Virus record (IMG/VR): IMGVR_UViG_3300031521_001337
Coordinates: 62,001 to 126,000 of that record
Strand: one strand, 5' to 3'
Length of the DNA: 64,000 nt
This document shows positions 2,963 through 23,262 of this stretch, piece by piece; within the stretch, counting starts at the first letter, position 1; each line of letters opens with the position of its first letter. The notes under the pieces are model-generated. The model searched no databases. It was given only the letters and a program-made list of their open reading frames with translations, and was not told the DNA's origin. A program made the translations under genes and the position numbers.

Positions 2963-3838
2963 ATGAAAAACTTCAAGTTTTTAGCAATTTGCGTAATTGC
3001 TGTTCTCTCAATGTCTTTAACTTCTTGTATGCACACAACTGATCCGGGTTATGCCTCTGTAATTAATGAACGTTATGGTTCAGACAAAGGTGTTCAACCA
3101 GTTCCAGTAGGCCCCGGTACTTATTACTCTGGTTTTGGTCAGGATTATTTCGATTTTCCTACTTTCCAAGTAAACTGGACATTTACTCATGACAAATCTG
3201 AAGGCTCTGACACTAATGAAGAATTTACATTTCAAACCAAAGAAGGTATGGAATGTGGAGTAGATTTAGGTCTTGCTATGCACTTTGATATGGATAAATT
3301 GCCGAAAATGTATACAACTTATCGTAAAGGCGTAGAAGAAATTCGTGGTACTGTAGTTCGTAATGCCATTCGTGATGCTTTGAATAGAGTAGCTGGTAAT
3401 ATGCCGGTTGAATCTGTTTATGGTAACGGTAAAGGTTTACTAATTGACACAGTATCAAAACTTGTTAAAGCTCAACTCGCTCCTAATGGAATTGTAGTAG
3501 ATCGTCTATCTTTAATTGGATCAGTACGTATACCTCAATCTATTAAAGATGCGTTGAATTCTAAAGTTCAGATGACACAAGATGCGCAACGTGCGCAAAA
3601 TGAGGTTGTTAAAGCCGAAGCAGAAGCTAAAATTAAAGTAGCTAAAGCACAAGGTGATGCTGAAGCTATGCTTACTAATGCACGTGCAGAAGCTGAAGCT
3701 AATAAACTTAAGAATTCTACTTTAACTCCGTTGTTGGTTCAAATGCGTTGGATTGAAGCATGGCAAGAAGGTGGTTCACACGTTCCTACTTATGTTACTG
3801 GTGCTGCCGGTAATAGCTTCATGATGCAAATGAAGTAA
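2963..3838 (+). CDS. SPFH/band 7/prohibitin-domain lipoprotein
   Basis: Lipobox-like LTSC; SPFH core (IRDALNRVAG...SVYG); Ala/Glu coiled coil AEAEAKIKVAKAQGDAEA; WIEAW..G tail. Confidence 0.9.
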   Translation: MKNFKFLAICVIAVLSMSLTSCMHTTDPGYASVINERYGSDKGVQPVPVGPGTYYSGFGQDYFDFPTFQVNWTFTHDKSEGSDTNEEFTFQTKEGMECGVDLGLAMHFDMDKLPKMYTTYRKGVEEIRGTVVRNAIRDALNRVAGNMPVESVYGNGKGLLIDTVSKLVKAQLAPNGIVVDRLSLIGSVRIPQSIKDALNSKVQMTQDAQRAQNEVVKAEAEAKIKVAKAQGDAEAMLTNARAEAEANKLKNSTLTPLLVQMRWIEAWQEGGSHVPTYVTGAAGNSFMMQMK

Positions 3839-3858
3839 TAATAAATTGAAAAATTGTA

Positions 3859-3896
3859 AAGATCTGCTCTCCTATGTGTGAGAGCGGATCTTTTTT
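3859..3896 (+). terminator. intrinsic terminator
   Basis: AAGATCTGCTCTC/GAGAGCGGATCTT hairpin plus T run. Confidence 0.8.
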
Positions 3897-3929
3897 AAAT
3901 CAAAAACAAAAACAAATAAAATATTAGAT

Positions 3930-4949
3930 ATGCCAATTATTCAAAATAATAAAGTCTATACTATAGGCAATATTACTGGTTCTCACGATAAATTACCCGT
4001 TGGTAATTATGCCTTACAATTTAATGAAAGTAATGAACAATTTTTCCTTACTCAACAAATTGATTTTAAATTACCTTCAAAACTTTATGGTGATTTCAAC
4101 TTTATTGATCGTTGGATTAAATCTTACGAACACAATAGTGCTAAAAATCTTGGTATTTTATTATCTGGTACAAAAGGAACAGGTAAAACAGTAGCTGCTC
4201 AGTTATTCTGTCAAAGAATGAACAAACCTGTTATTTTTATCACTGAAGCATACAATGGTCCCGGTTTTGAAGCATTCATTTCTGATCCACACTTTTCTGA
4301 TTCTATTATCTTTATTGATGAATTTGAGAAAGTATATCGTCGTGATGAAGAATCAAATTCATTATTGACATTAATGGATGGTATGTATCATACTAAATTG
4401 ATTTTCTTATTAACTGCAAACGATCCTTCTTCAATTAATAACAAATTGAAAAATCGTTTGAATCGTGTTAAATATCACAAAATTTACAGTAAACTTGATG
4501 CCGCTACAGTTGCTGAAATTGTTGATGATTTACTTAAAAAACCTGCATATCGTGATTCAGTTGACAAATTTGTTGAAACTGTTGATATGTTGACAATGGA
4601 TGTACTTACATCTATTATCCGGGAAGTAAATTTATTTGATGAATCTGCTCTTGAATGCGCCAAGTTCCTTAACTTGACCGCTGAACCTGAATATTTCAAT
4701 ATTACAGTTACTTATAAAGGAACTGATTATAAATGTGATGGTCAATTTGTAAATTATCGTAAGAACCCTGTAATTATTGCATATTATCAATCTGGTTATC
4801 CAAAAGAATTGACAAAATTATTGCCGGATTATACCAGTGTTAAATTATTCGAACGACCATATTCTATTATTGATGGTGTGGTTGTTTGTAAATATGCTGA
4901 AGGTGTTGAAATTAAACTTTCAAAAAGTTCTTACGCATTATCATTCTAA
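3930..4949 (+). CDS. AAA+ ATPase
   Basis: Walker A GTKGTGKT, Walker B IIFIDEFEK, LLTAN sensor, NRLNR arginine finger. Confidence 0.9.
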   Translation: MPIIQNNKVYTIGNITGSHDKLPVGNYALQFNESNEQFFLTQQIDFKLPSKLYGDFNFIDRWIKSYEHNSAKNLGILLSGTKGTGKTVAAQLFCQRMNKPVIFITEAYNGPGFEAFISDPHFSDSIIFIDEFEKVYRRDEESNSLLTLMDGMYHTKLIFLLTANDPSSINNKLKNRLNRVKYHKIYSKLDAATVAEIVDDLLKKPAYRDSVDKFVETVDMLTMDVLTSIIREVNLFDESALECAKFLNLTAEPEYFNITVTYKGTDYKCDGQFVNYRKNPVIIAYYQSGYPKELTKLLPDYTSVKLFERPYSIIDGVVVCKYAEGVEIKLSKSSYALSF

Positions 4950-6159: not shown

Positions 6160-6566
<407 letters not shown>

Positions 6567-6581
6567 TTAAATTGAAATTAA

Positions 6582-6950
6582 ATGGAAATAGTAGAAAATT
6601 TTAAGATGAAAGTTAGTAATCCTGATCAAATAAAAACTGTTCAGAGAATATTAAGTAGTATGGGTTTATTAGAGAAATTTTTATCTTCATTTTATTATGA
6701 AGGAATTTGTTATAGATATCATTCAAAACAAATGACTGGTTTTGGAAATACTAATGTACATTTTGATGATCATGAGCATAAAGAAATTACTTATGATGAA
6801 TTTATTGAAAAATATGATATTTTTAATGTTTCAACTAAAAATGTTATAATTACTACTGATATCATGTTTAAATTCATTGAATATTACATGGATCACCTTA
6901 ATGATGAAAAAACGCCACAAGAACTATTTAAAGATTGGAAAAATGATTGA
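6582..6950 (+). CDS. paralog array 1, member 1
   Basis: ENFKM...VQRIL...EITYDEF.EKY...FIEYYMDHLNDE. Confidence 0.8.
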   Translation: MEIVENFKMKVSNPDQIKTVQRILSSMGLLEKFLSSFYYEGICYRYHSKQMTGFGNTNVHFDDHEHKEITYDEFIEKYDIFNVSTKNVIITTDIMFKFIEYYMDHLNDEKTPQELFKDWKND

Positions 6951-7338
6951 AAGTTTTAAAATTAAAATTGCAGATGAAAGAGAACATAAAATAGTTCAAG
7001 AAACTTTGTTTTCTAATGGAGCTAAATGGAGAGAAGGTCAAGAAACAGTTTTATTTGGACCTAATCCAAATATAAATTGGAATGGACTTGAATATAATTC
7101 TGTAACTAAAAAAATTGGAGGATTTACTGATATAACTTCTACATCATCGTTTAATAGACATGATAAAAATGAAATATCATTTGCAGATTTTTGTAGTAAA
7201 TATGTAACTGACTCTATTCATTCAGAAAAAAATAAATATGTTTTGTTTGTACAATATTGTATGAACCATTTAAATGATGAAAAAACATTTGAAGAATTAT
7301 ATGATGAATATATATTAAATCTGAAAAATGATAAATGA
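6943..7338 (+). CDS. paralog array 1, member 2
   Basis: MIESFKI...VQETLFSNGAKW...EISFADF...YCMNHLNDE; ATG at 6943. Confidence 0.8.
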   Translation: MIESFKIKIADEREHKIVQETLFSNGAKWREGQETVLFGPNPNINWNGLEYNSVTKKIGGFTDITSTSSFNRHDKNEISFADFCSKYVTDSIHSEKNKYVLFVQYCMNHLNDEKTFEELYDEYILNLKNDK

Positions 7339-7720
7339 GAATTTTAAAATAAGAGTAAATAATCCAGAAGAGTCCATATTTGTTCAAAAACTATTATTTC
7401 AAAATGGTTCAAAATGGAGAAATGGTAAATCAGAAGTTAATCTTGTTGATAGCCAAGGTAGTTCGTGGAAAGGGTTATATCATTATTTAAATAATACTAT
7501 AACTGGTGATGCAACTATTGGAGGATATTTTCATAATCATGATAATCCTGAAATAACATTAGAAGAATTTAAAATTAGATATTTTGGTAAAGGTGAAACA
7601 AGTAGACAAACTTGTATTGATTTTGCTAAATATTGTATGGATCATTTAAATGATGAATTAACAATAGAACAATTATTTGATAACTTTATAAAACCAAAAA
7701 ATGGAAATAAAACCTTTTAA
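7328..7720 (+). CDS. paralog array 1, member 3
   Basis: ENFKI...VQKLLFQNGSKW...EITLEEF...YCMDHLNDE. Confidence 0.8.
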   Translation: MINENFKIRVNNPEESIFVQKLLFQNGSKWRNGKSEVNLVDSQGSSWKGLYHYLNNTITGDATIGGYFHNHDNPEITLEEFKIRYFGKGETSRQTCIDFAKYCMDHLNDELTIEQLFDNFIKPKNGNKTF

Positions 7721-8072
7721 AATATATCATCTTGATAATGAACAATCTAAAATTGTTCAAAATATGGTATTTCGCGATGGTGGTGGATGGGGAAGCAGCT
7801 TAGATAAAGATTTAAGAATGTTTAGTCCTAGTAATACTATTACTTTATGTATGACATCTAAAGGTATGTTAAGATCCGGTGTAGTAGTTACCCAAAGTAC
7901 ATTTGATGGTCTTGAAGGAGAAGAATTAACATATGATCAATTTAAAGAAAAATATGCTAATACTTTACGTATATCTAGAGAGAAAATCCTTGCATTTGCT
8001 GAATATTACACTAACAATATAGTTGGCGCATCATCTCCAGATGATGTATTAACTGACTTCTTAAAATTATGA
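7701..8072 (+). CDS. paralog array 1, member 4
   Basis: KPFKI...VQNMVFRDGGGW...ELTYDQF...FAEYY. Confidence 0.8.
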   Translation: MEIKPFKIYHLDNEQSKIVQNMVFRDGGGWGSSLDKDLRMFSPSNTITLCMTSKGMLRSGVVVTQSTFDGLEGEELTYDQFKEKYANTLRISREKILAFAEYYTNNIVGASSPDDVLTDFLKL

Positions 8073-8437
8073 TAATCGAAAATTTTAAAATACATCATCT
8101 TACTAGGGATCAATTTAAATTTGTTCAAGAAATAATATTTAAAAATAATTGTTCATGGGTAGGATCACACACAACTAACATTAAAGAACATTCAGATAGT
8201 AATGATATTTCTATTGTAGTAAATAATCTTGAGGCGAGATCTGGATCAGATATTGTACAAGGTATATTTGATCAACTTAGAGGAGAAGAAATTACTTTTG
8301 AACAATTTAAAGAATTATATTTTATTAATATTCCTAAATTTACTAAACAACAAATGTTTGATTTTGCGGAATTTTATGCAAATAATTCAGACACAATATT
8401 AAATGATGAATTGCTAAAACAATTTTTAAATCCATAA
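8069..8437 (+). CDS. paralog array 1, member 5
   Basis: ENFKI...VQEIIFKNNCSW...EITFEQF...FAEFY. Confidence 0.8.
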   Translation: MIIENFKIHHLTRDQFKFVQEIIFKNNCSWVGSHTTNIKEHSDSNDISIVVNNLEARSGSDIVQGIFDQLRGEEITFEQFKELYFINIPKFTKQQMFDFAEFYANNSDTILNDELLKQFLNP

Positions 8438-9336
8438 TGAACGAAACTCAAACAGAAATTGGAGTTGTTATCGGGAGATTTCAGCTACACGAATTGCATA
8501 CTGAACATATCAAGTTAATTGAACATGTTCTTGCAAACCACGAAAAGGTAATTTTATTCTTAGGAACTACATCTGCAATGGGTACTCAAAGAAATCCATT
8601 GGATTTTATTACCCGTAAAGCTATGATCGAAGCACATTTTAGAAATAGAATATCTTCAATTGTACCACTTGCTGATTGTAAATCCAATGAAGTATGGTCT
8701 ACTCAAATTCGTACTAAAGTAAGAGATATTTTTCCATCTGGAACAGTTACTCTTTATGGAGGTAAAGATTCGTTTATTCCATATTATACTGGAAATTGGA
8801 AAACAACTGAACTTGAACCAGAAGTCTATATATCTGCAACAGATATTAGAAAGAAAGTTGCCGGACGTATATTAGCATCATCTGATTTCAGAGCTGGTAT
8901 AATTTATTCGGTTTTTTCACAATATCCCCGCTCATTTTCAACAGTTGATGTTGCAATCTTTAATGAAAAAGGTGAAATTCTATTAGGTCAAAAACCTGAT
9001 GAAAAAGAATGGTGTTTTGTTGGAGGATTTGTTGATGTTACTGATGAATCCGATGAAGCTGCTGCTCGTCGTGAAGGTAGAGAAGAAACAGGTCTTGAAC
9101 TTGCTGACTTTGAATTCGTTTGTTCAAAACGTGTAGAAGATTGGCGATATAAGAATTCACATGATGCTAAAATTATGACGCATTTATACAAATGTAAATA
9201 TACTTTTGGTAGTCCACAACCTCAAGATGATATTGCTGCCTTAAAATGGTTCCCATACGGTCCTGAGCTAGACAAAATCTTGGTTGGAGAACATAAAAAG
9301 TTATTAGTTGACTTATTAAAAAATACTGAAAAATGA
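8437..9336 (+). CDS. bifunctional NMN adenylyltransferase / Nudix ADP-ribose pyrophosphatase (NadM-Nudix)
   Basis: GRFQ...H..H nucleotidyltransferase motif, RNPLDF..R, ISATDIR; Nudix box GGFVD...AAARREGREETGL. Confidence 0.92.
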   Translation: MNETQTEIGVVIGRFQLHELHTEHIKLIEHVLANHEKVILFLGTTSAMGTQRNPLDFITRKAMIEAHFRNRISSIVPLADCKSNEVWSTQIRTKVRDIFPSGTVTLYGGKDSFIPYYTGNWKTTELEPEVYISATDIRKKVAGRILASSDFRAGIIYSVFSQYPRSFSTVDVAIFNEKGEILLGQKPDEKEWCFVGGFVDVTDESDEAAARREGREETGLELADFEFVCSKRVEDWRYKNSHDAKIMTHLYKCKYTFGSPQPQDDIAALKWFPYGPELDKILVGEHKKLLVDLLKNTEK

Positions 9337-9671
9337 AAAAATACTACAGAGTATGTAACATAAATACCCATCAAGGTTTATGGTATGATTATAAAGGTAT
9401 TTTTACAGGATTAATTCATAATGATTTTAATTTTTGTTTAAATTCAAAACTTGAAATGGATTTTGATCCTAAATTAGTAGGCTGGTTATCAGTTACTGAA
9501 TCATTAGAGGGTTTATATCAATGGTTTCCTAAAGCAGATATTATTAAACTTCAAAAATTTGGATGGTTTGTTCATGAATTTGAAGCAGTTGATATTAAAT
9601 TTTATGAAAGATTTCAACACGATGTTATTAAACAAGACACTTCAAAATTTATTAAATTAATAAAACTATAA
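9333..9671 (+). CDS. hypothetical protein
   Basis: 112 aa ORF with ATGA overlap. Confidence 0.65.
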   Translation: MKKYYRVCNINTHQGLWYDYKGIFTGLIHNDFNFCLNSKLEMDFDPKLVGWLSVTESLEGLYQWFPKADIIKLQKFGWFVHEFEAVDIKFYERFQHDVIKQDTSKFIKLIKL

Positions 9672-9799
9672 TGGAAACGTACTTTAACGCAATTACTACA
9701 ATGAATTTACAAGAAGGTATAATTTTTACAGGTATTTGTATCGTTGTAATAATTGTATTAGGTACATTCATTAAAAACATTAACGATCATATTTAAACA

Positions 9800-10246
9800 A
9801 TGGTAATTAAAGCTCCAAATAATATAAATCAACGAGATATACATAAACCTTCTATGTTTTTAGCAGGTAGTATTGAAATGGGTCAAGCTGAAAATTGGCA
9901 AGATACTATGACAAAATATTTTGAAAAAGATTTTAATATATTTAATCCTCGTAGAGATAATTGGGATAGTTCTTGGGTTCAATCTTTTGATAATCCTGAA
10001 TTTTTTCAACAAGTTTCTTGGGAATTACACGCATTAGATTTTTCTGATATAATTATTATGTATTTTGATCCTAAAACTATGTCTCCAATTAGTTTATTAG
10101 AATTAGGTTTATATGCAACTTCTAAAAAGTTACATGTAATTTGTCCTGAAGGATTTTGGAGAAAAGGTAATATAGAAATTGTATGTTCTAAATATAATAT
10201 TCCTTTATACAATAGTATTGAAGAATTTAAAAATAAATTTAAATAA
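9800..10246 (+). CDS. nucleoside 2-deoxyribosyltransferase-like protein
   Basis: FLAGSIEMG..NWQ, FNPRR..W, QVSWE..AL..SD, SPISLLELG, GN..IVC motifs. Confidence 0.85.
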   Translation: MVIKAPNNINQRDIHKPSMFLAGSIEMGQAENWQDTMTKYFEKDFNIFNPRRDNWDSSWVQSFDNPEFFQQVSWELHALDFSDIIIMYFDPKTMSPISLLELGLYATSKKLHVICPEGFWRKGNIEIVCSKYNIPLYNSIEEFKNKFK

Positions 10247-11677
10247 ATGCCAAAATTTCATCCAACAACCGCAACTGATGCATATAAATTTGTGCATTGG
10301 ACGCAACGTCCTTCGGGATTGACAAGACTTATGTCTTATGGAGAACCTCGTGTAGGAGGTCAACACTCTCATATTGTTTTCTATGGTATACAATATTTCA
10401 TAAAAGAATATTTTATGACTGTTGTCACTAATGAAGATATTGAACGTGGTGCTCGTAGAAGTTTAAATACTTTTGGTAACCCTGGTTATTTCCCTCAAGA
10501 AATTTGGGAAAAAGTTCGCGATTTAGGATATTATCCTTTAGAAATCAAAGCTGTAAAAGAAGGAACTGTTGTTCCAACTGGTAATGTTTGTTATACAATT
10601 GAAGCTACTGAAGAGTGGTTTGCACCAATGGTTAGTCACTTCGAACCTTGGTTAATGTGGAATTGGTATCCAGTTGCCGTTGCTACTCGTATGTATAATA
10701 TTCATAAAGGTATTACTCCATCATTCAAAATCTCTACTAACAACGCTATGTTGGATTATGTAGTTAATGATTTTGGATTAAGAGGTGCTCAAGGTCATGA
10801 AGCTGCTTGTTTAGGTGGTTCTGCTGCTTTAATCTTTTCTGATGGTTCTGATAATGTTCCAGCAATGGAATTTATTGAAGACTATTACGGAGATGCAACC
10901 GTAGGAAAATCTGTATGGGCAACTGAACACTCAGTAGCAACTGTATTTGGTCCTGGTCAGGGAGAATTTGATTATGTCAATGCTCAATTTGATCGCGCTG
11001 GTGACGATGCTATGGTATCAATTGTTATTGATTCTTATGATGATACTAATTTCATTAAAAATGTTATTGGTTCAGAAGCAATCAAACAACGTATTATCGC
11101 ACGTCCAGGTAGAACTATTTTACGTCCGGATTCTGGTGTTCCGTTAACAAATATGATTAAGTATTCTGAAATGCTTGGTAATATTTTTGGATATCACTTA
11201 AATGAAGTAGATTACAGAGTAATTAATCATAATGTAGGCTTAATTCAAGGAGATGGTATGAATGAAAATTCAATCGTTGATATTTATTCAGAATACATTA
11301 AAACTGGTTGGTCTTGTGAAAACTTTGCGGTTGGTTCAGGTGGTGGTTTGCTTGTTGAAGGATTGACCAGAGATACAGATCGTTGGGCAGTAAAATGCTG
11401 TTTCGCTGTAATTGATGGAGAATCAAAAGATATTCGTAAATCTCCTAAAGGAGATATGACTAAAGCTTCAAAAGCTGGTATTTTGAAACTTCATAAAGCC
11501 GGATCAGAATTCATTACTATCGAAAGTTCTAAAGAACAATATGGTATTAATAATGGATATGCTGATGAACTTGAAATAGTTTATCGTAATGGTAAATTAA
11601 TGAGAGATCAACATTGGACAGAAATTCGCACTATTGCTAAGAGTTATCTTGAAGCCGATTTAAAAACAAGTAAATAA
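10247..11677 (+). CDS. nadV: nicotinamide phosphoribosyltransferase (NAMPT)
   Basis: TDAYK.H, DFGLRG, ATEHSV, VIDSYD, RPDSG, IQGDG, GSGGGLL, RDT motifs. Confidence 0.95.
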   Translation: MPKFHPTTATDAYKFVHWTQRPSGLTRLMSYGEPRVGGQHSHIVFYGIQYFIKEYFMTVVTNEDIERGARRSLNTFGNPGYFPQEIWEKVRDLGYYPLEIKAVKEGTVVPTGNVCYTIEATEEWFAPMVSHFEPWLMWNWYPVAVATRMYNIHKGITPSFKISTNNAMLDYVVNDFGLRGAQGHEAACLGGSAALIFSDGSDNVPAMEFIEDYYGDATVGKSVWATEHSVATVFGPGQGEFDYVNAQFDRAGDDAMVSIVIDSYDDTNFIKNVIGSEAIKQRIIARPGRTILRPDSGVPLTNMIKYSEMLGNIFGYHLNEVDYRVINHNVGLIQGDGMNENSIVDIYSEYIKTGWSCENFAVGSGGGLLVEGLTRDTDRWAVKCCFAVIDGESKDIRKSPKGDMTKASKAGILKLHKAGSEFITIESSKEQYGINNGYADELEIVYRNGKLMRDQHWTEIRTIAKSYLEADLKTSK

Positions 11678-11679
11678 CT

Positions 11680-11715
11680 AAATTACACTGGGATTAATTT
11701 CCCAGTGTAATTTTT
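11680..11715 (+). terminator. intrinsic terminator ending the NAD operon
   Basis: AAATTACACTGGGA/TCCCAGTGTAATTT 14-bp hairpin plus T run. Confidence 0.85.
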
Positions 11716-14583: not shown

Positions 14584-14655
14584 GTTCGGGTCTTATAGCG
14601 GCTAGTAATCTGGGTTTTCATCCCAGCAAGCGGGGTTCGATTCCCCGTCCGAATA
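14584..14655 (+). tRNA. tRNA-Glu(TTC)
   Basis: Cloverleaf; CTGGG-TTTTCAT-CCCAG. Confidence 0.9.
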
Positions 14656-14676
14656 CAAAATATTGATAAATTAATT

Positions 14677-14895
14677 ATGATAGAAAAAAAATATTATTTA
14701 CTTAGAATAAGTAATCGTGAAACACCAAGACTTATTTTTAAGTCTTCAAGCATATCAGATCTTAATAAAGTTTCAAGATATTTAAAAGATGCTATAGAAG
14801 ATCATGAAATATTTTTTATTACTGAAAATGATAGTAAAGATGTAATTGAAGAATGGATTTCTGAAGAATTAATTTGTGAAATATTCAATAATTAA
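14677..14895 (+). CDS. hypothetical protein
   Basis: 72 aa ORF between tRNAs. Confidence 0.55.
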   Translation: MIEKKYYLLRISNRETPRLIFKSSSISDLNKVSRYLKDAIEDHEIFFITENDSKDVIEEWISEELICEIFNN

Positions 14896-14898
14896 AAT

Positions 14899-14971
14899 AT
14901 AGATGTGGCGCAGTTGGTAGCGTTCTTGCTTTGGGAGCAAGGGGTCGTGAGTTCGAGTCTCACCATCTATA
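14899..14971 (+). tRNA. tRNA-Pro(TGG)
   Basis: CTTGC-TTTGGGA-GCAAG. Confidence 0.93.
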
Positions 14972-14981
14972 CAAAATATAT

Positions 14982-15054
14982 CGCGAAGTGGTAGCAGTGG
15001 TAGCTCGCAAGGCTCATAACCTTGAGGTCGGGGGTTCAATTCCCTCCTTCGCAA
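14982..15054 (+). tRNA. initiator tRNA-fMet(CAT)
   Basis: C1:A72 mismatch; CAAGG-CTCATAA-CCTTG. Confidence 0.9.
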
Positions 15055-15060
15055 CTAAAT

Positions 15061-15149
15061 ATCCTCAACTCTGTGACCATAAATCGGCAATTGATAATGG
15101 TTCAAACAAAGCACAAGACAGCCGAAACTTGATTGCGGCAGAGAGGGAT
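15061..15149 (+). ncRNA. candidate three-way-junction RNA with kissing loops
   Basis: ATCCTC..CTCTG/CAGAG.AGGGAT closing stem; two hairpins with complementary loops GGC and GCC. Confidence 0.5.
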
Positions 15150-15157
15150 GTTAAAAT

Positions 15158-15236
15158 AAAGGGTGGTAGATAGCAATTATGTGTAATTCATAAACGTATA
15201 AGTTGATTAAAGTTCTACTATATACCCAACCCTTTT
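15158..15236 (+). ncRNA. candidate hairpin RNA or terminator
   Basis: AAAGGGT..GGTAGA/TCTACT..ACCCTTT pairing followed by T run. Confidence 0.35.
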
Positions 15237-15257
15237 TAAAACTTAAACAAATAGATA

Positions 15258-15473
15258 ATGGATTGGATTTTAATGATTTTAAACTTATACGCTTATTATT
15301 TGATAAGTAATAAGAGAATAATTGGCTTCATACTTGGAGCAATTGGAAGTATTCTTGGAATAATATTATTCTGGAATATGATTTCAATAGTTATAATGTA
15401 TTTAGCATTTACAGTTTTAAATATTAGAGGATTTTTAAAATGGAATAAAAAATTAAAAGAAGAAACAGTCTAG
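15258..15473 (+). CDS. small three-TM protein, possibly PnuC-like half-transporter
   Basis: W..L...Y.L...K..IGF..G...........Y......N..GF.KW pattern. Confidence 0.45.
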   Translation: MDWILMILNLYAYYLISNKRIIGFILGAIGSILGIILFWNMISIVIMYLAFTVLNIRGFLKWNKKLKEETV

Positions 15474-15474
15474 G

Positions 15475-15608
15475 TCCAGAGGGCTCTAATTGTATATGAG
15501 GGAAGTGACTCTGGAATTCCTCCGTATTTAAAGTATTGGTGAATGTTATATCTAGAATGGTAATTTATTATCGTCGATGATGTTTCTATAATATACAATC
15601 GCAATTAG
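15475..15608 (+). ncRNA. candidate pseudoknotted RNA
   Basis: TCCAGAG/CTCTGGA stem; loop ATTGTATAT is perfectly complementary to ATATACAAT at 15591. Confidence 0.45.
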
Positions 15609-15629
15609 TATATCTTTTTTAAAATATAA

Positions 15630-15792
15630 AATATTGAAATGTTGGCTTGGAAGCAGCAATCATCTAAAGAGTGGGACGAGACTACGTTGATAAACCAATT
15701 CAAGTTGGAATTTAATGTGGTAAGGTAAGTTGGAGGTCACCCCGTAACTGGTAAGGACTGAAATCCCTTTGGCGTAATAGCACATCAATATT
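15630..15792 (+). ncRNA. 23S rRNA H43-H44 (uL11-binding GTPase-associated centre) mimic with 99-nt insertion
   Basis: ATGTTGGCTTGGAAGCAGCAATCATCTAAAGAGT...GCGTAATAGCACA, closed by AATATTGA/TCAATATT. Confidence 0.75.
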
Positions 15793-15802
15793 TTTAAAAA
15801 TT

Positions 15803-15958
15803 AAATGAGTAACATCCGAGAATGGTCGGTGAGTCAGGTAAGAGGGGAACCCAATGCTGACTTAGAATGAGGAATTAAGTCCAGATATCCCTAACGAAAA
15901 GATGTAGGTGTAGTCCCGTGGATAACATGCGTGTAATTGTCCCTCCCGTTACTCATTT
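15803..15958 (+). ncRNA. candidate structured ncRNA (~156 nt)
   Basis: 11-bp closing stem AAATGAGTAAC/GTTACTCATTT; internal CCGA/TCGG and TGAGTCAG/CTGACTTA stems. Confidence 0.6.
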
Positions 15959-15965
15959 TTAAAAT

Positions 15966-16038
15966 GCTCCAGTAGCTCAGTGGATAGAGCATCGGTTTTC
16001 TAAACCGAGGGTCGCTGGTTCAAGTCCAGCTTGGAGTA
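15966..16038 (+). tRNA. tRNA-Arg(TCT)
   Basis: TCGGT-TTTCTAA-ACCGA. Confidence 0.95.
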
Positions 16039-16039
16039 C

Positions 16040-16525
16040 AACTAGGTTTATTTATTATTAGCTACGATAGAATAAACCATCAAAGATGGGGTTGTAGTCT
16101 TAACTTATAAAGTTATTGCCCATACCAATTAACAAAACTAACTAGGGTCGAGCTACATTTTGCCACTGTTAGTATTAGACTTAGAGATCAGAGGTAGCCG
16201 TGACTACTCTAAGTTGAACAAATAAAATCTCTTTAATTGAAGCAAAACGGTAACCAGGGGGAGACACCCAACCCAATAAGGGGTAAGGACGAAAGTTGAG
16301 TACGTAGGTTATAAACCATAGCAGTGGTTGAATGTTTTGGTAAATGTAGTTATGATATGGTTAGTGTTCGCAGAAAAGCCTTCGTTATGACCTAAGTCAA
16401 TATAATTATTCCACTCTGCTTAAAGTGAATAAAGAGATTTTTTATGCCTACTTATACCCTCAAGCTTATATCTTGTTGAAAGGTTATTTGGTGACAGCCT
16501 GGTTCAATCCCAGGAGTAGGTACAA
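16040..16525 (+). ncRNA. candidate large ornate ncRNA (~480 nt)
   Basis: Several long-range helices of 9-12 bp, some crossing; ends in a T-arm-like hairpin CCTGG-TTCAATC-CCAGG. Confidence 0.55.
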
Positions 16526-16526
16526 T

Positions 16527-17006
16527 ATGGAAAGAAGTAAAAATGAATTATTAGCAATTGAAAAAGGATATAAAATAACTATAAATGGTGATATTTTAAA
16601 TCCTAAAGAAAAAATTTTAACAGGAACTATTTATAATAAAAATTATAAAAAATTTAATATTAGATTAAATGAAAAACATATTCCAGTTAAAGTACATAGA
16701 TTACAAGCATATCAAAAATTTGGAGAAATTATTTTTAACGAAGATATAGTAGTTAGACATTTAGATGGTAACGGATTAAATAATTCTTGGGATAATATTG
16801 AAATTGGATCATATAGTGATAATATGATGGATAAACCTAAAGAAGAAAGAATTAGAATTGCATCTAATGCTAATAAAAAATATTCTGATGAATTAGTTTT
16901 AGAAATTAAAGCATACCGAAATTTAGGGCATACTTATAAAGAAATTATGGAAAAATATAATATTAGTAGTAAAGGAACCATTAGTAATATTATTAATAAT
17001 AGATAA
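16527..17006 (+). CDS. HNH homing endonuclease with C-terminal HTH
   Basis: KVHRL.AY...VVRHLDGNGLNN..DNIEIGSYSDN; ATG at 16527 preferred over GTG 16425, which overlaps structured RNA. Confidence 0.85.
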   Translation: MERSKNELLAIEKGYKITINGDILNPKEKILTGTIYNKNYKKFNIRLNEKHIPVKVHRLQAYQKFGEIIFNEDIVVRHLDGNGLNNSWDNIEIGSYSDNMMDKPKEERIRIASNANKKYSDELVLEIKAYRNLGHTYKEIMEKYNISSKGTISNIINNR

Positions 17007-17079
17007 GCCCGTATGGTGAAGTGGTTAACATTCGATTCTGCAAAAATCGCACGCCCAAGTTCGAATCTTGGTATGGGCT
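17007..17079 (+). tRNA. tRNA-Cys(GCA)
   Basis: CGATT-CTGCAAA-AATCG; U73. Confidence 0.92.
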
Positions 17080-17095
17080 CAAAATAAATAAAATT

Positions 17096-17311
17096 ATGAA
17101 ATCAGGAGATATAGTTAAAATGACTAAATCCTTTAAAAGAGGATTAATTGCAAATGATTGTAAAGATCATGTTGATGAATTTGGAAAGTGTATAGGTATA
17201 GTTGAAGATTTAGTATATCCTGATGGTGAAGGTGATGAATGGAATGTTAGATGGTTACCTTCTAAATTAAGATATGGTTATTCTCCAGAAGAACTTGAAA
17301 TAATTAAATAA
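17096..17311 (+). CDS. hypothetical protein (SH3/KOW-like)
   Basis: MKSGDIVKM...; start moved out of tRNA-Cys. Confidence 0.6.
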   Translation: MKSGDIVKMTKSFKRGLIANDCKDHVDEFGKCIGIVEDLVYPDGEGDEWNVRWLPSKLRYGYSPEELEIIK

Positions 17312-17476
17312 AACCAGTAGGAACAACTGAACGTAGATTGAGAAGGCCTAGGAACTTAATAACGAAAGTTTGATAGTTTATGCATACTTGTCTCGCGCAT
17401 CGTATTTGGCGCATGGGTATTATTAAGTTTTTACCAGTTTGGCATACAATCACCGTGGCACAAAAAACTTTAAATC

Positions 17477-17550
17477 GGGGTCTTAGCTCATTTGGCTAGA
17501 GCGATTGCTTTGCAAGCAATAGGTGGTGGGTTCGAAACCCACAGATTCCA
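17477..17550 (+). tRNA. tRNA-Ala(TGC)
   Basis: G3:U70; ATTGC-TTTGCAA-GCAAT. Confidence 0.95.
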
Positions 17551-17642
17551 CTCTTCGAAGAAGCTAATTGGTAAACAGCAATTAGTTATCATTGGAAAGC
17601 TATTAAGGATGTCGAAAGTCTAAGAATAGTTACTGTTTAACT

Positions 17643-17716
17643 GTTTGCGTAGCTCAGTTGGTTAGAGCACCAGCCTGATAAGTTGGGGGTCACAGGTTCA
17701 AGTCCTGTTGTGAACA
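17643..17716 (+). tRNA. tRNA-Ile(GAT)
   Basis: CCAGC-CTGATAA-GTTGG; GU-rich acceptor stem. Confidence 0.9.
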
Positions 17717-17774
17717 CAAAGTAGATATAAAATTAGTATTGGTTCTACAAGATAGTACTGTCTACAATACAACC

Positions 17775-17846
17775 GAGAGCATAGTTCAGTGGTGGAACGC
17801 TTCCCTTACATGGAAGATGTCGGGAGTTCAATTCTCTCTGCTCTTA
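17775..17846 (+). tRNA. tRNA-Val(TAC)
   Basis: CTTCC-CTTACAT-GGAAG. Confidence 0.92.
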
Positions 17847-17899
17847 CAAATAAATTAGGTAAAATTGGGATGATTACCCAAGTTAAATGAAGATGGAAA

Positions 17900-18469
17900 A
17901 TGATTTTAAAACAAGGAATGAAGGTTTTATTAAAACCTAAAGAATGGTATGATGAGAAAAAAGCAGATTTCTTGCCAATATTGACTAATGATATGGAACA
18001 ATATTTTGGTAAAGAACATATTATAAAATCTGTAAAAATTGGAGGATCTCAATTAAGAGGTGTTGAATTATTTAATATTGAAAGTGATTCTAAAGGTTGG
18101 TATTTCTCAATAGATATGGTTGATAAGTATTATGATATGCCAATTACAACTAATGGATATGATAGATTAGTAAGTATGTATAATACCATAGGATCTAGTT
18201 TAACTTCAGGTACTTCAAGTATGTCAAGTGCTTTAAGTATGTATGAACAACTTTCATTACAAGAATTGAGAGGTAGAATGAGAGGTACTACTGATTTTAG
18301 TGGATTATTAGGTTTTTCAAACAGTCTTTCAATTCACGTTAAAGCATTTATACAATATGTTGAGAAGTTTGTTCCATTTGCTTATGATGGAGTTGTAACT
18401 TATACAGATAATGAAAATAATTCATTTACTTTAACACAGTTATATGAGAGATTCACTACCAACAGTTAA
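17900..18469 (+). CDS. paralog array 2, member 1
   Basis: KQGMKVLLKPKEWY...DMEQYFGK...; C-terminal F..Y.EK...NNSFTL..LYE. Confidence 0.8.
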   Translation: MILKQGMKVLLKPKEWYDEKKADFLPILTNDMEQYFGKEHIIKSVKIGGSQLRGVELFNIESDSKGWYFSIDMVDKYYDMPITTNGYDRLVSMYNTIGSSLTSGTSSMSSALSMYEQLSLQELRGRMRGTTDFSGLLGFSNSLSIHVKAFIQYVEKFVPFAYDGVVTYTDNENNSFTLTQLYERFTTNS

Positions 18470-18902
18470 GTATAAAGTAGGACAATGTGTACATTTGAAA
18501 TCTAAAGATTGGTTTGATGTACATGACGATAGAGGTGATGTTAGATTAGGTTTAGCTAGTGATATGAGACCTTATTTTGGAACAATTCAAGTTATTACTC
18601 ATGTTGATACAAATTATTGTGGATATGTTTTAGCAGGTTGCAGTGGTGGTAGTGATAATGAATATACGTATACTGATCAAATGATTGATAATATAAAAAC
18701 TTCTGAATTAATACATAGACATGAAAATATAATTGATCCTGATCAATATTCATGGGATGTTATTACTCCAAATAAATTTCCTGAACATCTTGAAAAGAAT
18801 TATACTCCATTTCTTGATGGTGAAACTTTAACATTTACTGATAAAGATAATAATTCATTTACTTTAAAAGAAATATTTGATGAGTTCTTTAAAGAAGTAT
18901 AA
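18444..18902 (+). CDS. paralog array 2, member 2
   Basis: KYKVGQCVHLKSKDWF...DMRPYFG...EKNYTP...NNSFTLKEIF. Confidence 0.8.
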   Translation: MRDSLPTVKYKVGQCVHLKSKDWFDVHDDRGDVRLGLASDMRPYFGTIQVITHVDTNYCGYVLAGCSGGSDNEYTYTDQMIDNIKTSELIHRHENIIDPDQYSWDVITPNKFPEHLEKNYTPFLDGETLTFTDKDNNSFTLKEIFDEFFKEV

Positions 18903-19254
18903 AATTGGTGATGTTGTTAGACTAAAATCATTAGCTTGGTTTGATGAAATGATGGAAAATCATGTAGCTGTTGAAGGTGGATTAATTTATGATATGCGTC
19001 AGTTTTTTGGTAAAGAACAAGTAATTTCAAATAATGAAGCAGGTTATGCATATATACCTTTATATCACTTAGTAGATGATCCACGTCATTGGAATTTTAG
19101 TAATGATATGATTGAAGGAATAGCTTCATCTTTTCCTGAATATGTAGAAAAGAATTATACACCACTTATTGATGAAGGTGGATTGTATTTTATAAATGAT
19201 AATAATGATGCATATAGTTTAAAAGAAATATATGAGAGGTACAGAGCGATATAA
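18877..19254 (+). CDS. paralog array 2, member 3
   Basis: KYKIGDVVRLKSLAWF...DMRQFFGK...EKNYTP...NDAYSLKEIY. Confidence 0.8.
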   Translation: MMSSLKKYKIGDVVRLKSLAWFDEMMENHVAVEGGLIYDMRQFFGKEQVISNNEAGYAYIPLYHLVDDPRHWNFSNDMIEGIASSFPEYVEKNYTPLIDEGGLYFINDNNDAYSLKEIYERYRAI

Positions 19255-19768
19255 AGTAGGTGATAAAGTATTAATGCAGTCTTTAGAATGGTTTGAAGAT
19301 GCATTAAATGGACGAGGTCCAAGACCTCTTTTTGGAGTTGTTGAAAGCATGCGTAGATTGTTTGGAAAAGTTCAAACAATTACTATGAGTAGTCAATCTA
19401 TGAATGATGAGGATAAATATAAAATATCAGGAGCTAATGAATTTAATATCAGTAATGATATGATTAGAGGTTTACTTGAAGAATTTAGTCAAACAATAAC
19501 TCATGATGGTAGATCAGAATATGTTCATAATGATGTTCTTGCTAGTATGACACCATCGTCAGGAACTTATATCATTAATTATGGAGATGATCCAAGATTT
19601 GGGGGCACAGTAACAAGAACTAAATCATTTTTACAAGTATTAAAGGAGAATTACACTCCGACAATAATTGATGAAGAATTATTATTTGTTAATAAAGATA
19701 ATGAATCCTATACATTAGATGTTTTATATAATAAATTTCATAATACACCTTCAGGATTATTTGAATAA
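19232..19768 (+). CDS. paralog array 2, member 4
   Basis: RYKVGDKVLMQSLEWF...SMRRLFGK...KENYTP...NESYTLDVLY. Confidence 0.8.
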   Translation: MRGTERYKVGDKVLMQSLEWFEDALNGRGPRPLFGVVESMRRLFGKVQTITMSSQSMNDEDKYKISGANEFNISNDMIRGLLEEFSQTITHDGRSEYVHNDVLASMTPSSGTYIINYGDDPRFGGTVTRTKSFLQVLKENYTPTIIDEELLFVNKDNESYTLDVLYNKFHNTPSGLFE

Positions 19769-19788
19769 ACCACTTCGGTGGTTTCTTT
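19767..19788 (+). terminator. intrinsic terminator
   Basis: AAACCAC-TTCG-GTGGTTT then CTTT. Confidence 0.75.
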
Positions 19789-19818
19789 CTGCTATTAACA
19801 ATATTTAACTAAATATAT

Positions 19819-19849
19819 TTTGCACTTTCGAAAATTTTTTGTATCTTTG
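19819..19849 (+). promoter_or_regulatory. Bacteroidota sigmaA-type promoter
   Basis: TTTG-N19-TATCTTTG matches the -33/-7 consensus. Confidence 0.8.
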
Positions 19850-19874
19850 TACTATTAATATAATAGTTCAATTT

Positions 19875-20618
19875 ATGGAAAACAAATATTCAAAAGAAAA
19901 TTTAGAAAAAATTGTAAAAGAAAGTTATTCTTTTGCAGATGTGTGTAGATATTATGGGTTGCCTTTAACTGCTGGTAATTATGAAACAATTCAAACTAAG
20001 ATAAAAAAACATCAAATTAGCACAATTCATTTTAAAAGAAATTCTTCAAATGAAACTAAGAATGTGTACACTTTAGATACAATCTTTTGTAAAGATTCAG
20101 CATATACACAAACAAGTAAGTTAAGAGATAAATTATTAAAAAATAATCTAAAAGAACATAAATGTGAATGTTGTGATAATACTAAATGAATGGGAGAACC
20201 TATTCCATTAGAAACACACCACATAGATGGTATTAAAACTAATAATGAATTAAATAATCTTAAATTATTATGTCCAAACTGTCATGCTTTTACTGATAAT
20301 TATAAAGGTAAAAATGTTAAAGATAAAGTTATAGATGCATTATATTGTAATTCTTGTGGTAATACTATAACAAGTTCTTCTGTAAGTGGTTTATGTTTAA
20401 GTTGTTCTGCTAAACGAATAGCTAATGATTTTTACGATGAACTTGGTATAACTCGTGAATATTTAAAAACTTTAGTTCGCACAGAAACATTTATTAATAT
20501 TGGTAAATTATACAATAGATCAGATAATGCTATTAGAAAATGGTGTAAACATTTTAATATACCTTCTTCAAAGAAAGAAATAAATAGTTTGTCTGATGAT
20601 GAATGGGATAAAATATAA
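19875..20618 (+). CDS. HNH homing endonuclease with one in-frame TGA (20187..20189)
   Basis: ORFs 19839..20189 and 20190..20618 are one frame: CECCDNTK*MGEPIPLETHHIDG...N...NLKLLCPNCH. Confidence 0.8.
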
Positions 20619-20623
20619 TTTAA

Positions 20624-20696
20624 GGACTCTAAGCTAATCTGGTGAAAGCGTATGCCTGAAGAGCATGAGAGGTTGGATCAAAACCAACAGAGTCCA
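20624..20696 (+). tRNA. tRNA-Phe(GAA)
   Basis: TATGC-CTGAAGA-GCATG; atypical T-loop ATCAAAA. Confidence 0.88.
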
Positions 20697-20772
20697 CTTA
20701 CGGTTTAGGACCGTTGTTGTTTCGGCAACAAACCACTTGGTAGTGTCGCTACAACCAAGTGGTTATTTACAA

Positions 20773-20845
20773 GATCTGATAGCTCAACTGGTAGAGCATC
20801 GCCCTTTTAAGGCGGGGGTTCTGGGTTCAAATCCCAGTCAGATCA
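20773..20845 (+). tRNA. tRNA-Lys(TTT)
   Basis: TCGCC-CTTTTAA-GGCGG. Confidence 0.95.
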
Positions 20846-20861
20846 CAAAAAAAAAACAATC

Positions 20862-20950
20862 GGGGGTGTGGCGAAATTGGTAGCCGCAGCTAAATATAGG
20901 TTAGACCATAGCGGTCGTGAGACATGGGGGTTCGAAGCCCTCCGCCCCCA
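20862..20950 (+). ncRNA. tRNA-Leu-like RNA with a distorted, 7-nt-expanded anticodon arm
   Basis: Leu-type acceptor, D, variable and T arms; anticodon region GCTA-AATATAGGTTAGACCA-TAGC. Confidence 0.7.
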
Positions 20951-20956
20951 CTAAAT

Positions 20957-21035
20957 TCCCCAATGGCGTAATTGGCAGACGCGTATTCTTCGGAATATGT
21001 CGAGAGACATGTGGGTTCGAGTCCTCCTTGGGGGA
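20957..21035 (+). ncRNA. class II tRNA-like RNA with a UUCG tetraloop in place of the anticodon loop
   Basis: TATTC-TTCG-GAATA; D-arm GCG..CGC; variable arm GTC-GAGA-GAC; acceptor TCCCCAA/TTGGGGG. Confidence 0.7.
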
Positions 21036-21041
21036 GCAAAT

Positions 21042-21122
21042 ATGTCAGTATACAAGCGGTTAAAGTAGTTAGTCTCCAAAACTAATCCGAAAGGTTCGTG
21101 GGTTCAAATCCTACCTGATGTG
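21042..21122 (+). tRNA. tRNA-Trp(CCA) with long variable arm
   Basis: TTAGT-CTCCAAA-ACTAA; variable arm CC-GAAA-GG; G73. Confidence 0.85.
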
Positions 21123-21127
21123 CAAAT

Positions 21128-21210
21128 GCTTGAGTGGCGAAATGGTTAATACGCGTATGCCTTAGGAGCATATGTCGAAAGATGTGTCGGTTCGAGTCCG
21201 ACCTCGAGTA
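21128..21210 (+). tRNA. tRNA-Leu(TAG)
   Basis: TATGC-CTTAGGA-GCATA; class II. Confidence 0.95.
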
Positions 21211-21230
21211 CAAATATAAAAATAGATAAA

Positions 21231-21846
21231 ATGAAATGTTTAGATTATTTAAAAAGAATAGGAGTTAAATTAAATGGCCCTAATGTTCATAAAACTGCAA
21301 TGATTCAACTTTCAGTATGTGAAAGATATGACAAACGATGGAATAGTAAGAATTATTATAATCCTTACACTTTTCAATATGGTCGACGTAAAGAACATTC
21401 AGCTAAAAGTTGGAATCAGATTATAACTCCTCCGATTTTTCCTGATAAACCTAAATATAATTTTGAACGTAAAGAAATAGAAGTTGAAGGATTTAGATTT
21501 TTACAACCCGAGAGTTATATAGATGGTAAAACTTATTTTAAATATGAAGAAACTTCTTTTGTAAGAAAGAATTGGAGACATATTGAAAATGAATGTAAAT
21601 CATATTCTAAAAAATGTGAAGATTATTGGTATTTAAAAGGAATATTTGACGAAAATAACAATTAAGATGGCAGCTAAATGTGTAAAATTAGGATGTGTTC
21701 CTAGAATTAATAATTGGGGAATTAGTTGGTGTACCGAATGTGGTAAATTATTTCCTTTTAATCTAAATCACAAACCGATTAATAAGAATTTTCTTACAGA
21801 AGAATCTAAACTTATTTATGAGAATTATTTAAAATCAAATCAATAA
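21231..21846 (+). CDS. two hypothetical proteins (21231..21665, 21646..21846)
   Basis: ORFs between tRNA blocks. Confidence 0.6.
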
Positions 21847-21853
21847 ATTAAAT

Positions 21854-21943
21854 GGAAGAGTACTCAAGTGCTTTAAGAGGACGGTCTTGAAAATCGTTAG
21901 ATCGTGTAAAAGCGGTGCGTGGGTCGGAATCCCACTTCTTCCA
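21854..21943 (+). tRNA. tRNA-Ser(TGA)
   Basis: ACGGT-CTTGAAA-ATCGT; long variable arm; C19:G56 swap. Confidence 0.88.
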
Positions 21944-21956
21944 CAATAATTAAACT

Positions 21957-22042
21957 GGAAATAGTAACTTACGAGAAGTAAGGCTTGCCTGCTAAGCAAA
22001 GCGTTCGTTTAGGCGAATAGGAGTTGGAATCCTACATTTCCG
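21957..22042 (+). tRNA. tRNA-Ser(GCT), atypical D and T arms
   Basis: TTGC-CTGCTAA-GCAA; variable arm TTCG..CGAA; G73. Confidence 0.75.
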
Positions 22043-22061
22043 CAAATTAAAACATAAACAG

Positions 22062-23006: not shown

Positions 23007-23011
23007 AAAAT

Positions 23012-23095: not shown

Positions 23096-23171
23096 CTAAA
23101 GTATTAGTCTTTAGACAATAAGCAAGATAAAAATAAGGAGTGGCACTTGCGTTCACCAATAATACTTTTCA

Positions 23172-23244: not shown

Positions 23245-23262
23245 CAAACTAAACAAAATAAA

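What the first reader, a model, noticed from the sequence alone, without database searches (positions are those of the whole stretch)
6582..8437. Five-gene tandem paralog array between tmRNA and the NAD operon
Five translationally coupled ~120-135 aa genes share an N-terminal FK(I/M)...VQ..LF module (G..W in most members), a central EI(T/S)(F/Y)..F..KY and a C-terminal F..Y..(D/N)HLNDE helix, with a divergent middle. Conserved scaffold plus variable insert in tandem suggests a diversifying family of host-interaction or anti-defence proteins (inference).
Basis: partly seen in the sequence, partly recalled or inferred. Interest (0 to 1): 0.6.

Follow-up and report, generated by a model that had tools for sequence, protein, structure and literature searches.

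The report
Shuffling five-gene phage paralog array
A 213-kb uncultured phage carries five overlapping copies of a small two-part protein of unknown function, and close relatives have swapped the front halves, fused genes and changed the copy number, which suggests, without proving it, an arms-race role.

Summary
Window 6582-8437 carries five overlapping, same-strand genes of 122-131 aa. They are true paralogs (BLASTP down to 1e-21) in two subgroups, g1-g3 and g4-g5. They lie between a phage tmRNA and a NatV/NadV NAD+ salvage (NARP2-type) gene set, and the 213-kb phage has no other copy.

Each protein has two parts:
- **C-terminal hairpin:** about 35 aa, two helices, found only in this phage lineage.

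The N-domain is widespread in phages. It occurs alone, repeated up to 8 times in one chain, or in front of about 36 different C-terminal families, including T7 gp1.7-like nucleotide kinases and MazZ-like pyrophosphohydrolases.

Related contigs have flanking genes 90-97% identical in protein. Their arrays have only four genes, N-domains exchanged as cassettes (36-43% identity) and hybrid genes, while each hairpin stays 80-97% identical.

So diversification is well supported. A host-interaction or anti-defence role remains an inference with no direct test. I rate it a new variant of a known kind, of moderate interest.

The parts
6160..6568 (+). Phage-encoded tmRNA, ending 14 nt before g1
   Evidence: ARAGORN (which ends it at 6566); Rfam RF00023, 107 bits, full length
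6582..6950 (+). g1, 122 aa. N-domain type N5, lacking the NG..W segment, plus hairpin type C1 (..FIEYYMDHLNDE..)
6943..7338 (+). g2, 131 aa (ATG at 6943). N-domain N6 plus hairpin C4
7328..7720 (+). g3, 130 aa. N-domain N2 plus hairpin C3. This is the protein that was modelled
   Evidence: (phrog_17589, 2.2e-7)
7328..7591 (+). g3 N-terminal alpha/beta domain, residues 1-88: E6-9, H13-25, E49-52, E57-61, H66-70, H78-86
   Evidence: AlphaFold2 pLDDT 95.5, pTM 0.86. No solved relative
7604..7690 (+). g3 C-terminal two-helix hairpin, residues 93-121
   Evidence: AlphaFold2 gives H93-105 and H113-121. It is slot-specific and conserved among relatives
7701..8072 (+). g4, 123 aa. N-domain N7 plus hairpin C5. 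Absent from relatives L010, L011 and L012
8069..8437 (+). g5, 122 aa. N-domain N8 plus hairpin C2. Its stop overlaps the NatV start
8437..9336 (+). NatV-like bifunctional NMN adenylyltransferase / Nudix protein (the Nmnat half of NARP2)
   Evidence: Pfam: NUDIX 1e-17. CTP_transf_like is weak (E 0.0024, 18.5 bits, below its 21-bit cut-off). Phage homologues are annotated as bifunctional NMNAT
10247..11677 (+). NadV-like nicotinamide phosphoribosyltransferase (the Nampt half of NARP2)
   Evidence: Pfam NAMPT_N 4e-16 and NAPRTase 8.6e-24. NARP2 is defined in bioRxiv 10.1101/2024.02.11.579819
11680..11713 (.). 14-bp-stem palindromic hairpin just after NadV. It is the first terminator-like element downstream of the array, so it may mark the end of the transcription unit (inference)

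Best explanation
The locus is a tandem array of five paralogous small cytoplasmic phage proteins. It is probably co-transcribed, and translated by stop-start coupling, with the downstream NAD+ salvage genes.

Each protein joins two modules. The first is an N-terminal alpha/beta domain of about 88 aa from the phage-specific family phrog_17589. It has a conserved core (strand 1, helix 1 and the 'PEITF..F..Y' strand-helix) around a hypervariable stretch at residues about 31-73. The second is a slot-specific two-helix C-terminal hairpin.

I read the N-domain as a target-binding module, probably for proteins, and the hairpin as a constant part that gives a shared output. That output might be oligomerisation or docking onto a common partner.

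The array evolves like an accordion. Recombination at the conserved domain boundary swaps N-domain cassettes between lineages. Unequal crossover fuses or deletes genes.

The most likely driver is an arms race with host factors that differ between host strains, that is, defence proteins or takeover targets.

Shown here: the paralogy, the two-module build, the confident fold without a solved relative, the promiscuity of the domain, the cassette shuffling, and the faster divergence than the flanks.

Inferred: co-transcription, binding, the role of the hairpin, and any counter-defence function.
For: - **Paralogy and copy number:**
- **Gene overlaps:** 1-20 nt through to NatV, with no terminator-like site on the + strand before 11680.
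- **Models:** whole g3 pLDDT 86.8; N-domain alone 95.5, pTM 0.86.
- **Conservation:** it sits in strand 1, helix 1 and PEITF..F..Y, with residues 31-73 variable.
- **Spread of the N-domain:** 177 representative clusters at E<=1e-3. 46 of 83 multi-domain hits match phrog_17589.
- **Architectures among 172 proteins:** 44 stand-alone, 118 N-terminal with an extension, 21 with 2-8 copies in one chain. C-terminal partners fall into 36 clusters. They include gp1.7-like nucleotide kinases, a dATP/dGTP pyrophosphohydrolase and one ART-PolyVal polyvalent protein.
- **Charge:** the domains are mostly acidic, median pI 5.4. This fits protein binding better than nucleic-acid binding.
- **Shuffling:** 12 N types and 9 C types occur in 15 combinations. 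N3 is found with C2, C3 and C4, and C2 with four N types. blastn breakpoints fall at the domain boundary.
- **Rates:** flanking genes are 90-97% identical with dN/dS 0.10-0.19. Swapped N-domains are 36-43% identical. Orthologous N-domains have dN/dS 0.33-0.69 against 0.06-0.32 for their hairpins.
- **Relative L022:** NatV is 93% identical but array members only 39-55%.
- **Context:** the neighbouring Nampt plus Nmnat pair is the published NARP2 counter-defence pathway.
Against: - No sequence or fold similarity to any characterised anti-defence, defence or host-takeover protein.
- No expression data. No RNA run clearly holds the stretch.
- dN/dS stays below 1 for clean orthologues. The values near or above 1 come from replaced cassettes, where alignment and saturation make them unreliable. 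Relaxed constraint plus recombination could therefore explain the pattern without positive selection.
- Relative L008 keeps the array but has lost the 3' part of NatV through NadV. The array is therefore not functionally tied to NARP2.
- An HNH homing endonuclease sits beside the array in L010. It could drive local recombination without any selection on the array.
- Fusion of the N-domain to housekeeping-type nucleotide enzymes suits a generic adaptor role as well as a conflict role.
Confidence: 0.4

Rival explanations
1. The proteins are accessory or regulatory subunits of phage nucleotide or NAD+ metabolism. The N-domain would be a nucleotide-sensing or enzyme-docking module, and the five proteins would tune or scaffold NatV, NadV or other nucleotide enzymes.
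For: The N-domain is fused to T7 gp1.7-like nucleotide kinases (DUF3310; phrogs 236, 1689, 4472) and to a dATP/dGTP pyrophosphohydrolase (PF18909, phrog_801). The array overlaps NatV and lies in a block with Nampt, a nucleoside 2-deoxyribosyltransferase-like gene and a HAD/PNKP phosphatase.
Against: L008 keeps a four-gene array after losing NatV(3')-NadV. Most fusion partners, 36 clusters in all with the largest at 32 members, are not recognisable nucleotide enzymes. A metabolic subunit would not be expected to swap its main domain between phages that are 90-97% identical in flanking proteins.
Confidence: 0.15
2. The array is a weakly selected, recombination-prone multigene family. Its variability would come mainly from local recombination, through homing-endonuclease activity and unequal crossover between repeats, and not from an arms race. 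Individual copies would be dispensable.
For: Copy number varies between 4 and 5 and hybrid genes occur. An HNH endonuclease gene is inserted next to the array in L010. One relative has a 1-nt deletion in an A7 run of g2. dN/dS is below 1 but raised in the N-domain.
Against: All five frames are intact and identical across many peat samples. Hairpins are under clear purifying selection, with dN/dS 0.06-0.32. Every hybrid found joins at the domain boundary and keeps the frame. The fold is confidently predicted and conserved across at least 172 diverse proteins.
Confidence: 0.15
3. The proteins act in phage-against-phage competition or superinfection exclusion. Each N-domain variant would target a protein of a competing phage or mobile element.
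For: The same diversification pattern as above. The domain occurs in many unrelated phage lineages, which could be both users and targets.
Against: There is no specific evidence. The proteins have no membrane segments or signal peptides that would suggest entry exclusion (sequences).
Confidence: 0.08
4. The proteins are RegA-like translational or RNA regulators, possibly linked to the adjacent tmRNA.
For: A language-model feature search placed a PF01818 (T4 RegA) cluster third at score 0.82, which is a lead only. RegA is also about 122 aa (from my own knowledge). The array starts 14 nt after the tmRNA.
Against: Pfam gives no PF01818 hit even at E<=1. The profile search of PDB sequences does not find RegA. 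Neither fold search lists it. The proteins are acidic.
Confidence: 0.03

Closest known systems
PHROG family phrog_17589 (phage proteins of unknown function)
   Same: The N-terminal 80 or so residues of g3 match the profile (2.2e-7). g1 is marginal (0.009) and g2 weak (0.096). 46 of 83 multi-domain relatives found with the array profile match it, down to 1e-28.
   Different: The PHROG profile covers only the N-domain. The C-terminal hairpin, the five-gene array and the cassette shuffling are not part of it. g4 and g5 do not reach it on their own.
Viral multigene-family expansion and contraction under host pressure ('genomic accordions', anti-defence gene islands in phages)
   Same: Tandem paralogs, copy-number change among close relatives, in-frame hybrid genes from unequal crossover, faster divergence than the flanks, and a position beside a known counter-defence pathway.
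   Different: No target or phenotype is known, and formal positive selection is not shown. The comparison is by behaviour only and rests partly on my own knowledge of those systems.
Promiscuous N-terminal domains of DNA-virus proteins such as KilA-N and Bro-N
   Same: A domain of about 90 aa found mostly at N-termini, joined to many unrelated C-terminal domains, sometimes in several copies.
   Different: No Pfam hit to KilA-N or Bro-N and no fold match to any solved structure. This is an analogy, not membership.
NARP2 (Nampt plus Nmnat NAD+ reconstitution pathway; KVP40 NadV/NatV)
   Same: The genes right after the array carry the Nampt domains (PF18127, PF04095). They also carry a NUDIX domain with a weak cytidylyltransferase-like match, as in the published pathway.
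   Different: The five array proteins are not part of the defined pathway, and one relative keeps the array without it.

Membership tests
phrog_17589 | Significant match to the family profile HMM | tested here: met
   g3 2.2e-7 over residues 5-81. g1 0.0089, g2 0.096, g4 and g5 none. All five are joined by their own profile, and that profile retrieves phrog_17589 members.
EF-hand calcium-binding proteins | Canonical 12-residue loop with acidic or polar ligands at positions 1, 3 and 5, Gly at 6 and Glu at 12, plus a significant profile match | tested here: not met
   The best PDB sequence hit, calcineurin B, has E 0.037 and 0.17 with the N-domain profile. With the conserved I/L placed at loop position 8, g3 has H, H and N at positions 1, 3 and 5 and Pro at 6. 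g4 and g5 have Gln at 12 (sequences).
T4 RegA translational repressor (PF01818) | Pfam match or fold match to 1REG | tested here: not met
   No Pfam hit at E<=1. Not among the PDB profile hits or the fold hits. The only trace is an Atlas feature score of 0.82.
T7 gp1.7-like nucleotide kinase (DUF3310, PF11753) | Presence of the DUF3310 domain | tested here: not met
   None of the five proteins has it. It occurs only as a C-terminal partner of the N-domain in other phages.
Known anti-phage defence system components (PADLOC) | Match to a PADLOC model | tested here: not met
   The only hit is KwaA at E 0.031 for g2, which is not significant.
Anti-defence proteins (functional class) | Inhibits or evades a bacterial defence system when expressed | not testable with these tools
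   This needs a host or defence-system assay. Only context is available.
NARP2 (for the neighbouring genes) | Nampt (PF18127 plus PF04095) together with an Nmnat in the same phage | tested here: met
   NadV at 10247-11677 has both domains. NatV at 8437-9336 has NUDIX at 1e-17 plus CTP_transf_like at E 0.0024, 18.5 bits, below its 21-bit cut-off. Enzyme activity was not tested.

The most novel reading that the evidence does not exclude
The phrog_17589 domain is a new protein fold that phages use as a general, evolvable binding scaffold, a phage counterpart to antibody-like or repeat-protein scaffolds. This array would then be a combinatorial library of inhibitors. Recombination at the domain boundary would swap N-domain 'heads' onto constant hairpin 'handles' to track variable host immune proteins.
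Probability: 0.15. Interest if true: 0.8.

Novelty: new variant of a known kind. Interest (0 to 1): 0.5.

Why it matters
If the N-domain is an evolvable binding scaffold, it would annotate a large block of phage 'dark matter'. That block covers at least 177 sequence clusters, many architectures, and repeats of up to 8 per chain. It would also add a family of candidate counter-defence or host-takeover proteins beside a known NAD+ counter-defence pathway.

The locus gives a clean natural example of domain-level cassette exchange in a phage gene array. It also offers a confidently predicted small fold with no solved relative, which makes a good structural target.

If the variability turns out to be neutral, this is an ordinary multigene family of hypothetical proteins in a large phage.

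Tried and rejected
- **Pfam, NCBIfam, PADLOC on all five proteins:** nothing significant.
- **blastn of the locus against cultured phages:** no match.
- **tblastn of g3:** only 'hypothetical protein' genes of Rheinheimera Barba phages at about 28% identity, plus one Pseudomonas phage record not listed in the output.
- **tblastn of a stand-alone N-domain (P0026):** no match.
- **EF-hand resemblance of the '..H.HD.PEIT.EEF' stretch:** sub-significant, and the ligand positions do not fit.
- **RegA lead from the Atlas feature search:** not backed by any other test.
- **Homodimer prediction for g3 (two copies):** no verdict, score 0.24 against a mark of 0.42. It counts neither for nor against binding.
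- **Promoter scans:** sigma-70 sites are not enriched (40 found against 39 expected). The Bacteroidota-type TANNTTTG motif is not enriched either (86 against 106 expected). No promoter is claimed.
- **NatV as an anchor in IMG/VR:** only identical fragments.
- All runs were contigs, so they say nothing about expression.

Full report
**Setting.** The window is bases 62001-126000 of a 213,486-bp IMG/VR virus record that CheckV rates 100% complete. It is about 30% G+C. It carries a tmRNA and 24 tRNA genes and a replication block with DNA polymerase, helicases, primase and ligase. Its nearest cultured relatives share only about 34% identity in the polymerase. Only 2 of 92 longer genes have a Shine-Dalgarno-like core, and the bases before start codons are A-rich. 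From general knowledge this suggests a Bacteroidota host, which is an inference. Twenty 'peat metagenome' runs hold the stretch almost completely. Related contigs come from sewage and wastewater assemblies.

**The observation.** Five + strand genes lie at 6582-6950 (g1), 6943-7338 (g2), 7328-7720 (g3), 7701-8072 (g4) and 8069-8437 (g5). They overlap by 8, 11, 20 and 4 nt, and g5's stop overlaps the start of the next gene by 1 nt. The tmRNA ends 14 nt before g1.

The genes after the array are:
- a NatV-like NUDIX protein with a weak cytidylyltransferase-like match;
- a 112-aa ORF;
- a nucleoside 2-deoxyribosyltransferase-like gene;
- a NadV-like Nampt.

Nampt plus Nmnat is the NARP2 counter-defence pathway (bioRxiv 10.1101/2024.02.11.579819).

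The five proteins are 27-37% identical. BLASTP E-values reach 1e-21, and they form two subgroups, g1-g3 and g4-g5. A profile built from them finds exactly these five places in the whole phage genome. HLNDE is in g1-g3 only, and G..W is in three of the five.

**Anatomy.** AlphaFold2 with a 76-row alignment gives a confident model of g3 (pLDDT 86.8). It has an N-terminal alpha/beta domain (residues 1-88) and a C-terminal two-helix hairpin (93-121). The N-domain folded alone reaches pLDDT 95.5 and pTM 0.86.

Conservation across 90 relatives sits in strand 1 (FKI.V), helix 1 (PEQS.IVQE.LF.NGY.W) and the strand-helix 'PEITF..F...Y'. Residues 31-73 are variable and prone to insertions.

**The wider family.** An exhaustive profile search of 1.84 billion representatives finds 177 proteins at E<=1e-3. 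Only about 13 of them are full-length, with E<=1e-10. The rest match the N-domain alone. This domain corresponds to phrog_17589, a family of unknown function.

Among 172 proteins with the domain:
- 44 are stand-alone;
- 118 have it at the N-terminus followed by something else;
- 10 have it internally;
- 21 carry 2-8 copies in one chain;
- the C-terminal partners fall into 36 sequence clusters.

Recognisable partners are T7 gp1.7-like nucleotide kinases (DUF3310), a MazZ-like dATP/dGTP pyrophosphohydrolase, and one polyvalent protein with an ADP-ribosyltransferase domain. Most partners are unknown. The domains are mostly acidic, with median pI 5.4. The C-terminal hairpin is confined to this phage lineage.

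**Evolution of the array.** Fragments identical to the window occur in several JGI and IMG records. Related contigs are 85-93% identical in nucleotides in the flanks and differ sharply inside the array.

| Contig | What differs from the window |
|---|---|
| L010, L011, L012 | Four genes; g4 is missing |
| L008 | Four genes. Its second gene joins a g2-slot N-domain to the g3 hairpin, as expected from unequal crossover. It has also lost the 3' part of NatV through NadV |
| L019 | 91-96% identical on both sides, but g1 residues about 10-68 are replaced |
| L022 | NatV is 93% identical (278 of 299), but its four array proteins are only 39-55% identical to any window member. One joins a g3-like N-domain to a g4-like hairpin |

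At a 60% identity threshold I count 12 N-domain types and 9 hairpin types in 15 combinations. One N type is found on three different hairpins, and one hairpin carries four N types. Breakpoints sit at the conserved domain boundary.

Flanking genes have dN/dS 0.10-0.19. Clean orthologues in the array have 0.33-0.69 in the N-domain and 0.06-0.32 in the hairpin. Replaced cassettes are 36-43% identical while the hairpin of the same gene is 80-97% identical. Contigs from one peat run show two coexisting versions of 8076-8434, within g5.

**Interpretation.** The structural and evolutionary description is well supported. For function I commit, at about 0.4, to the following. The N-domain is a binding scaffold with a variable surface, the hairpin is a constant handle, and the array is diversified by recombination under pressure from variable host factors such as defence or takeover targets.

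The support is indirect. It rests on the scaffold-like conservation pattern, the promiscuous and repeated use of the domain, its acidity, the accordion-like behaviour, and the overlap with a NARP2-type gene set.

Against it: there is no similarity to any characterised protein and no expression data, dN/dS is below 1 in clean orthologues, the array persists without NARP2 in L008, and a homing endonuclease gene lies beside the array in L010 and could promote recombination on its own. The rivals are set out in their own section: nucleotide-metabolism adaptors, a weakly selected recombination-prone family, inter-phage competition, and RegA-like regulators.

**Comparison with what is known.** The N-domain belongs to phrog_17589, with the membership test met for g3 and met through the shared profile for the others. 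The array behaves like viral multigene families that expand and contract under host pressure. The domain behaves like the promiscuous N-terminal domains KilA-N and Bro-N. Both are analogies only. The EF-hand, RegA, DUF3310 and PADLOC memberships were tested and not met.

**Verdict.** The feature is real. I rate it a new variant of a known kind: a diversifying accessory gene array built from an uncharacterised, widespread phage domain with no solved fold. Interest is moderate at 0.5.

Noticed in passing
window 6160-6568: Phage-encoded tmRNA (Rfam 107 bits). ARAGORN reads the tag peptide as GNKTISFARTAFMAAA. It sits directly upstream of the array. Relatives share it at only about 74-89% nucleotide identity.
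   Followed up: partly
window 14584-26810: Block of 24 tRNA genes on the + strand. It includes an odd tRNA-Tyr with anticodon ATA (20862-20951) and one call with an undetermined two-base anticodon (20956-21037).
   Followed up: no
L010 4134-4658 (between the window's 6553 equivalent and the array): An HNH endonuclease gene (174 aa, minus strand) is inserted between the tmRNA and the array in one relative only. A homing endonuclease here could promote local recombination.
   Followed up: partly
L008 5037-5294, against window 8437-11652: This relative has a deletion equal to window 8695-11652. It leaves an 85-aa NatV stub and removes NadV, so NARP2 is lost while the paralog array is kept.
   Followed up: yes
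window 9800-10246; L010 7607-8146; L011 3046-3174: The slot between the 112-aa ORF and NadV also varies. The window has a nucleoside 2-deoxyribosyltransferase-like gene (148 aa). L010 and L012 have a 179-aa ORF in a stretch with no blastn match to the window. L011 has neither.
   Followed up: partly
L019 about 2036-2430 (g2 equivalent): A 1-nt deletion in an A7 run breaks the g2 frame in a 3-kb JGI contig. It could be an assembly error, a pseudogene or slippage.
   Followed up: partly
window, all + strand genes: Only 2 of 92 longer ORFs have a Shine-Dalgarno-like core, and the upstream bases are A-rich. This suggests a Bacteroidota-type host.
   Followed up: partly
window 2963-4949: A Band_7/SPFH protein with a lipoprotein-like N-terminus (291 aa), followed by an AAA ATPase (339 aa), lies upstream. 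The AAA gene is only 70% identical in L008, though 94% in L010.
   Followed up: no
window 8076-8434, run X15: Contigs of one peat metagenome run show two coexisting versions of this part of g5. One is identical to the window, the other differs at about 10% of positions with small indels.
   Followed up: partly
L007 2286-3167 and neighbouring ORFs; P0023: The largest class of N-domain fusion proteins (32 clusters) carries further uncharacterised domains that repeat an '..EITFEQFKKY(V/I)L' motif. Neighbouring ORFs in L007 carry the same motif without the N-domain.
   Followed up: no
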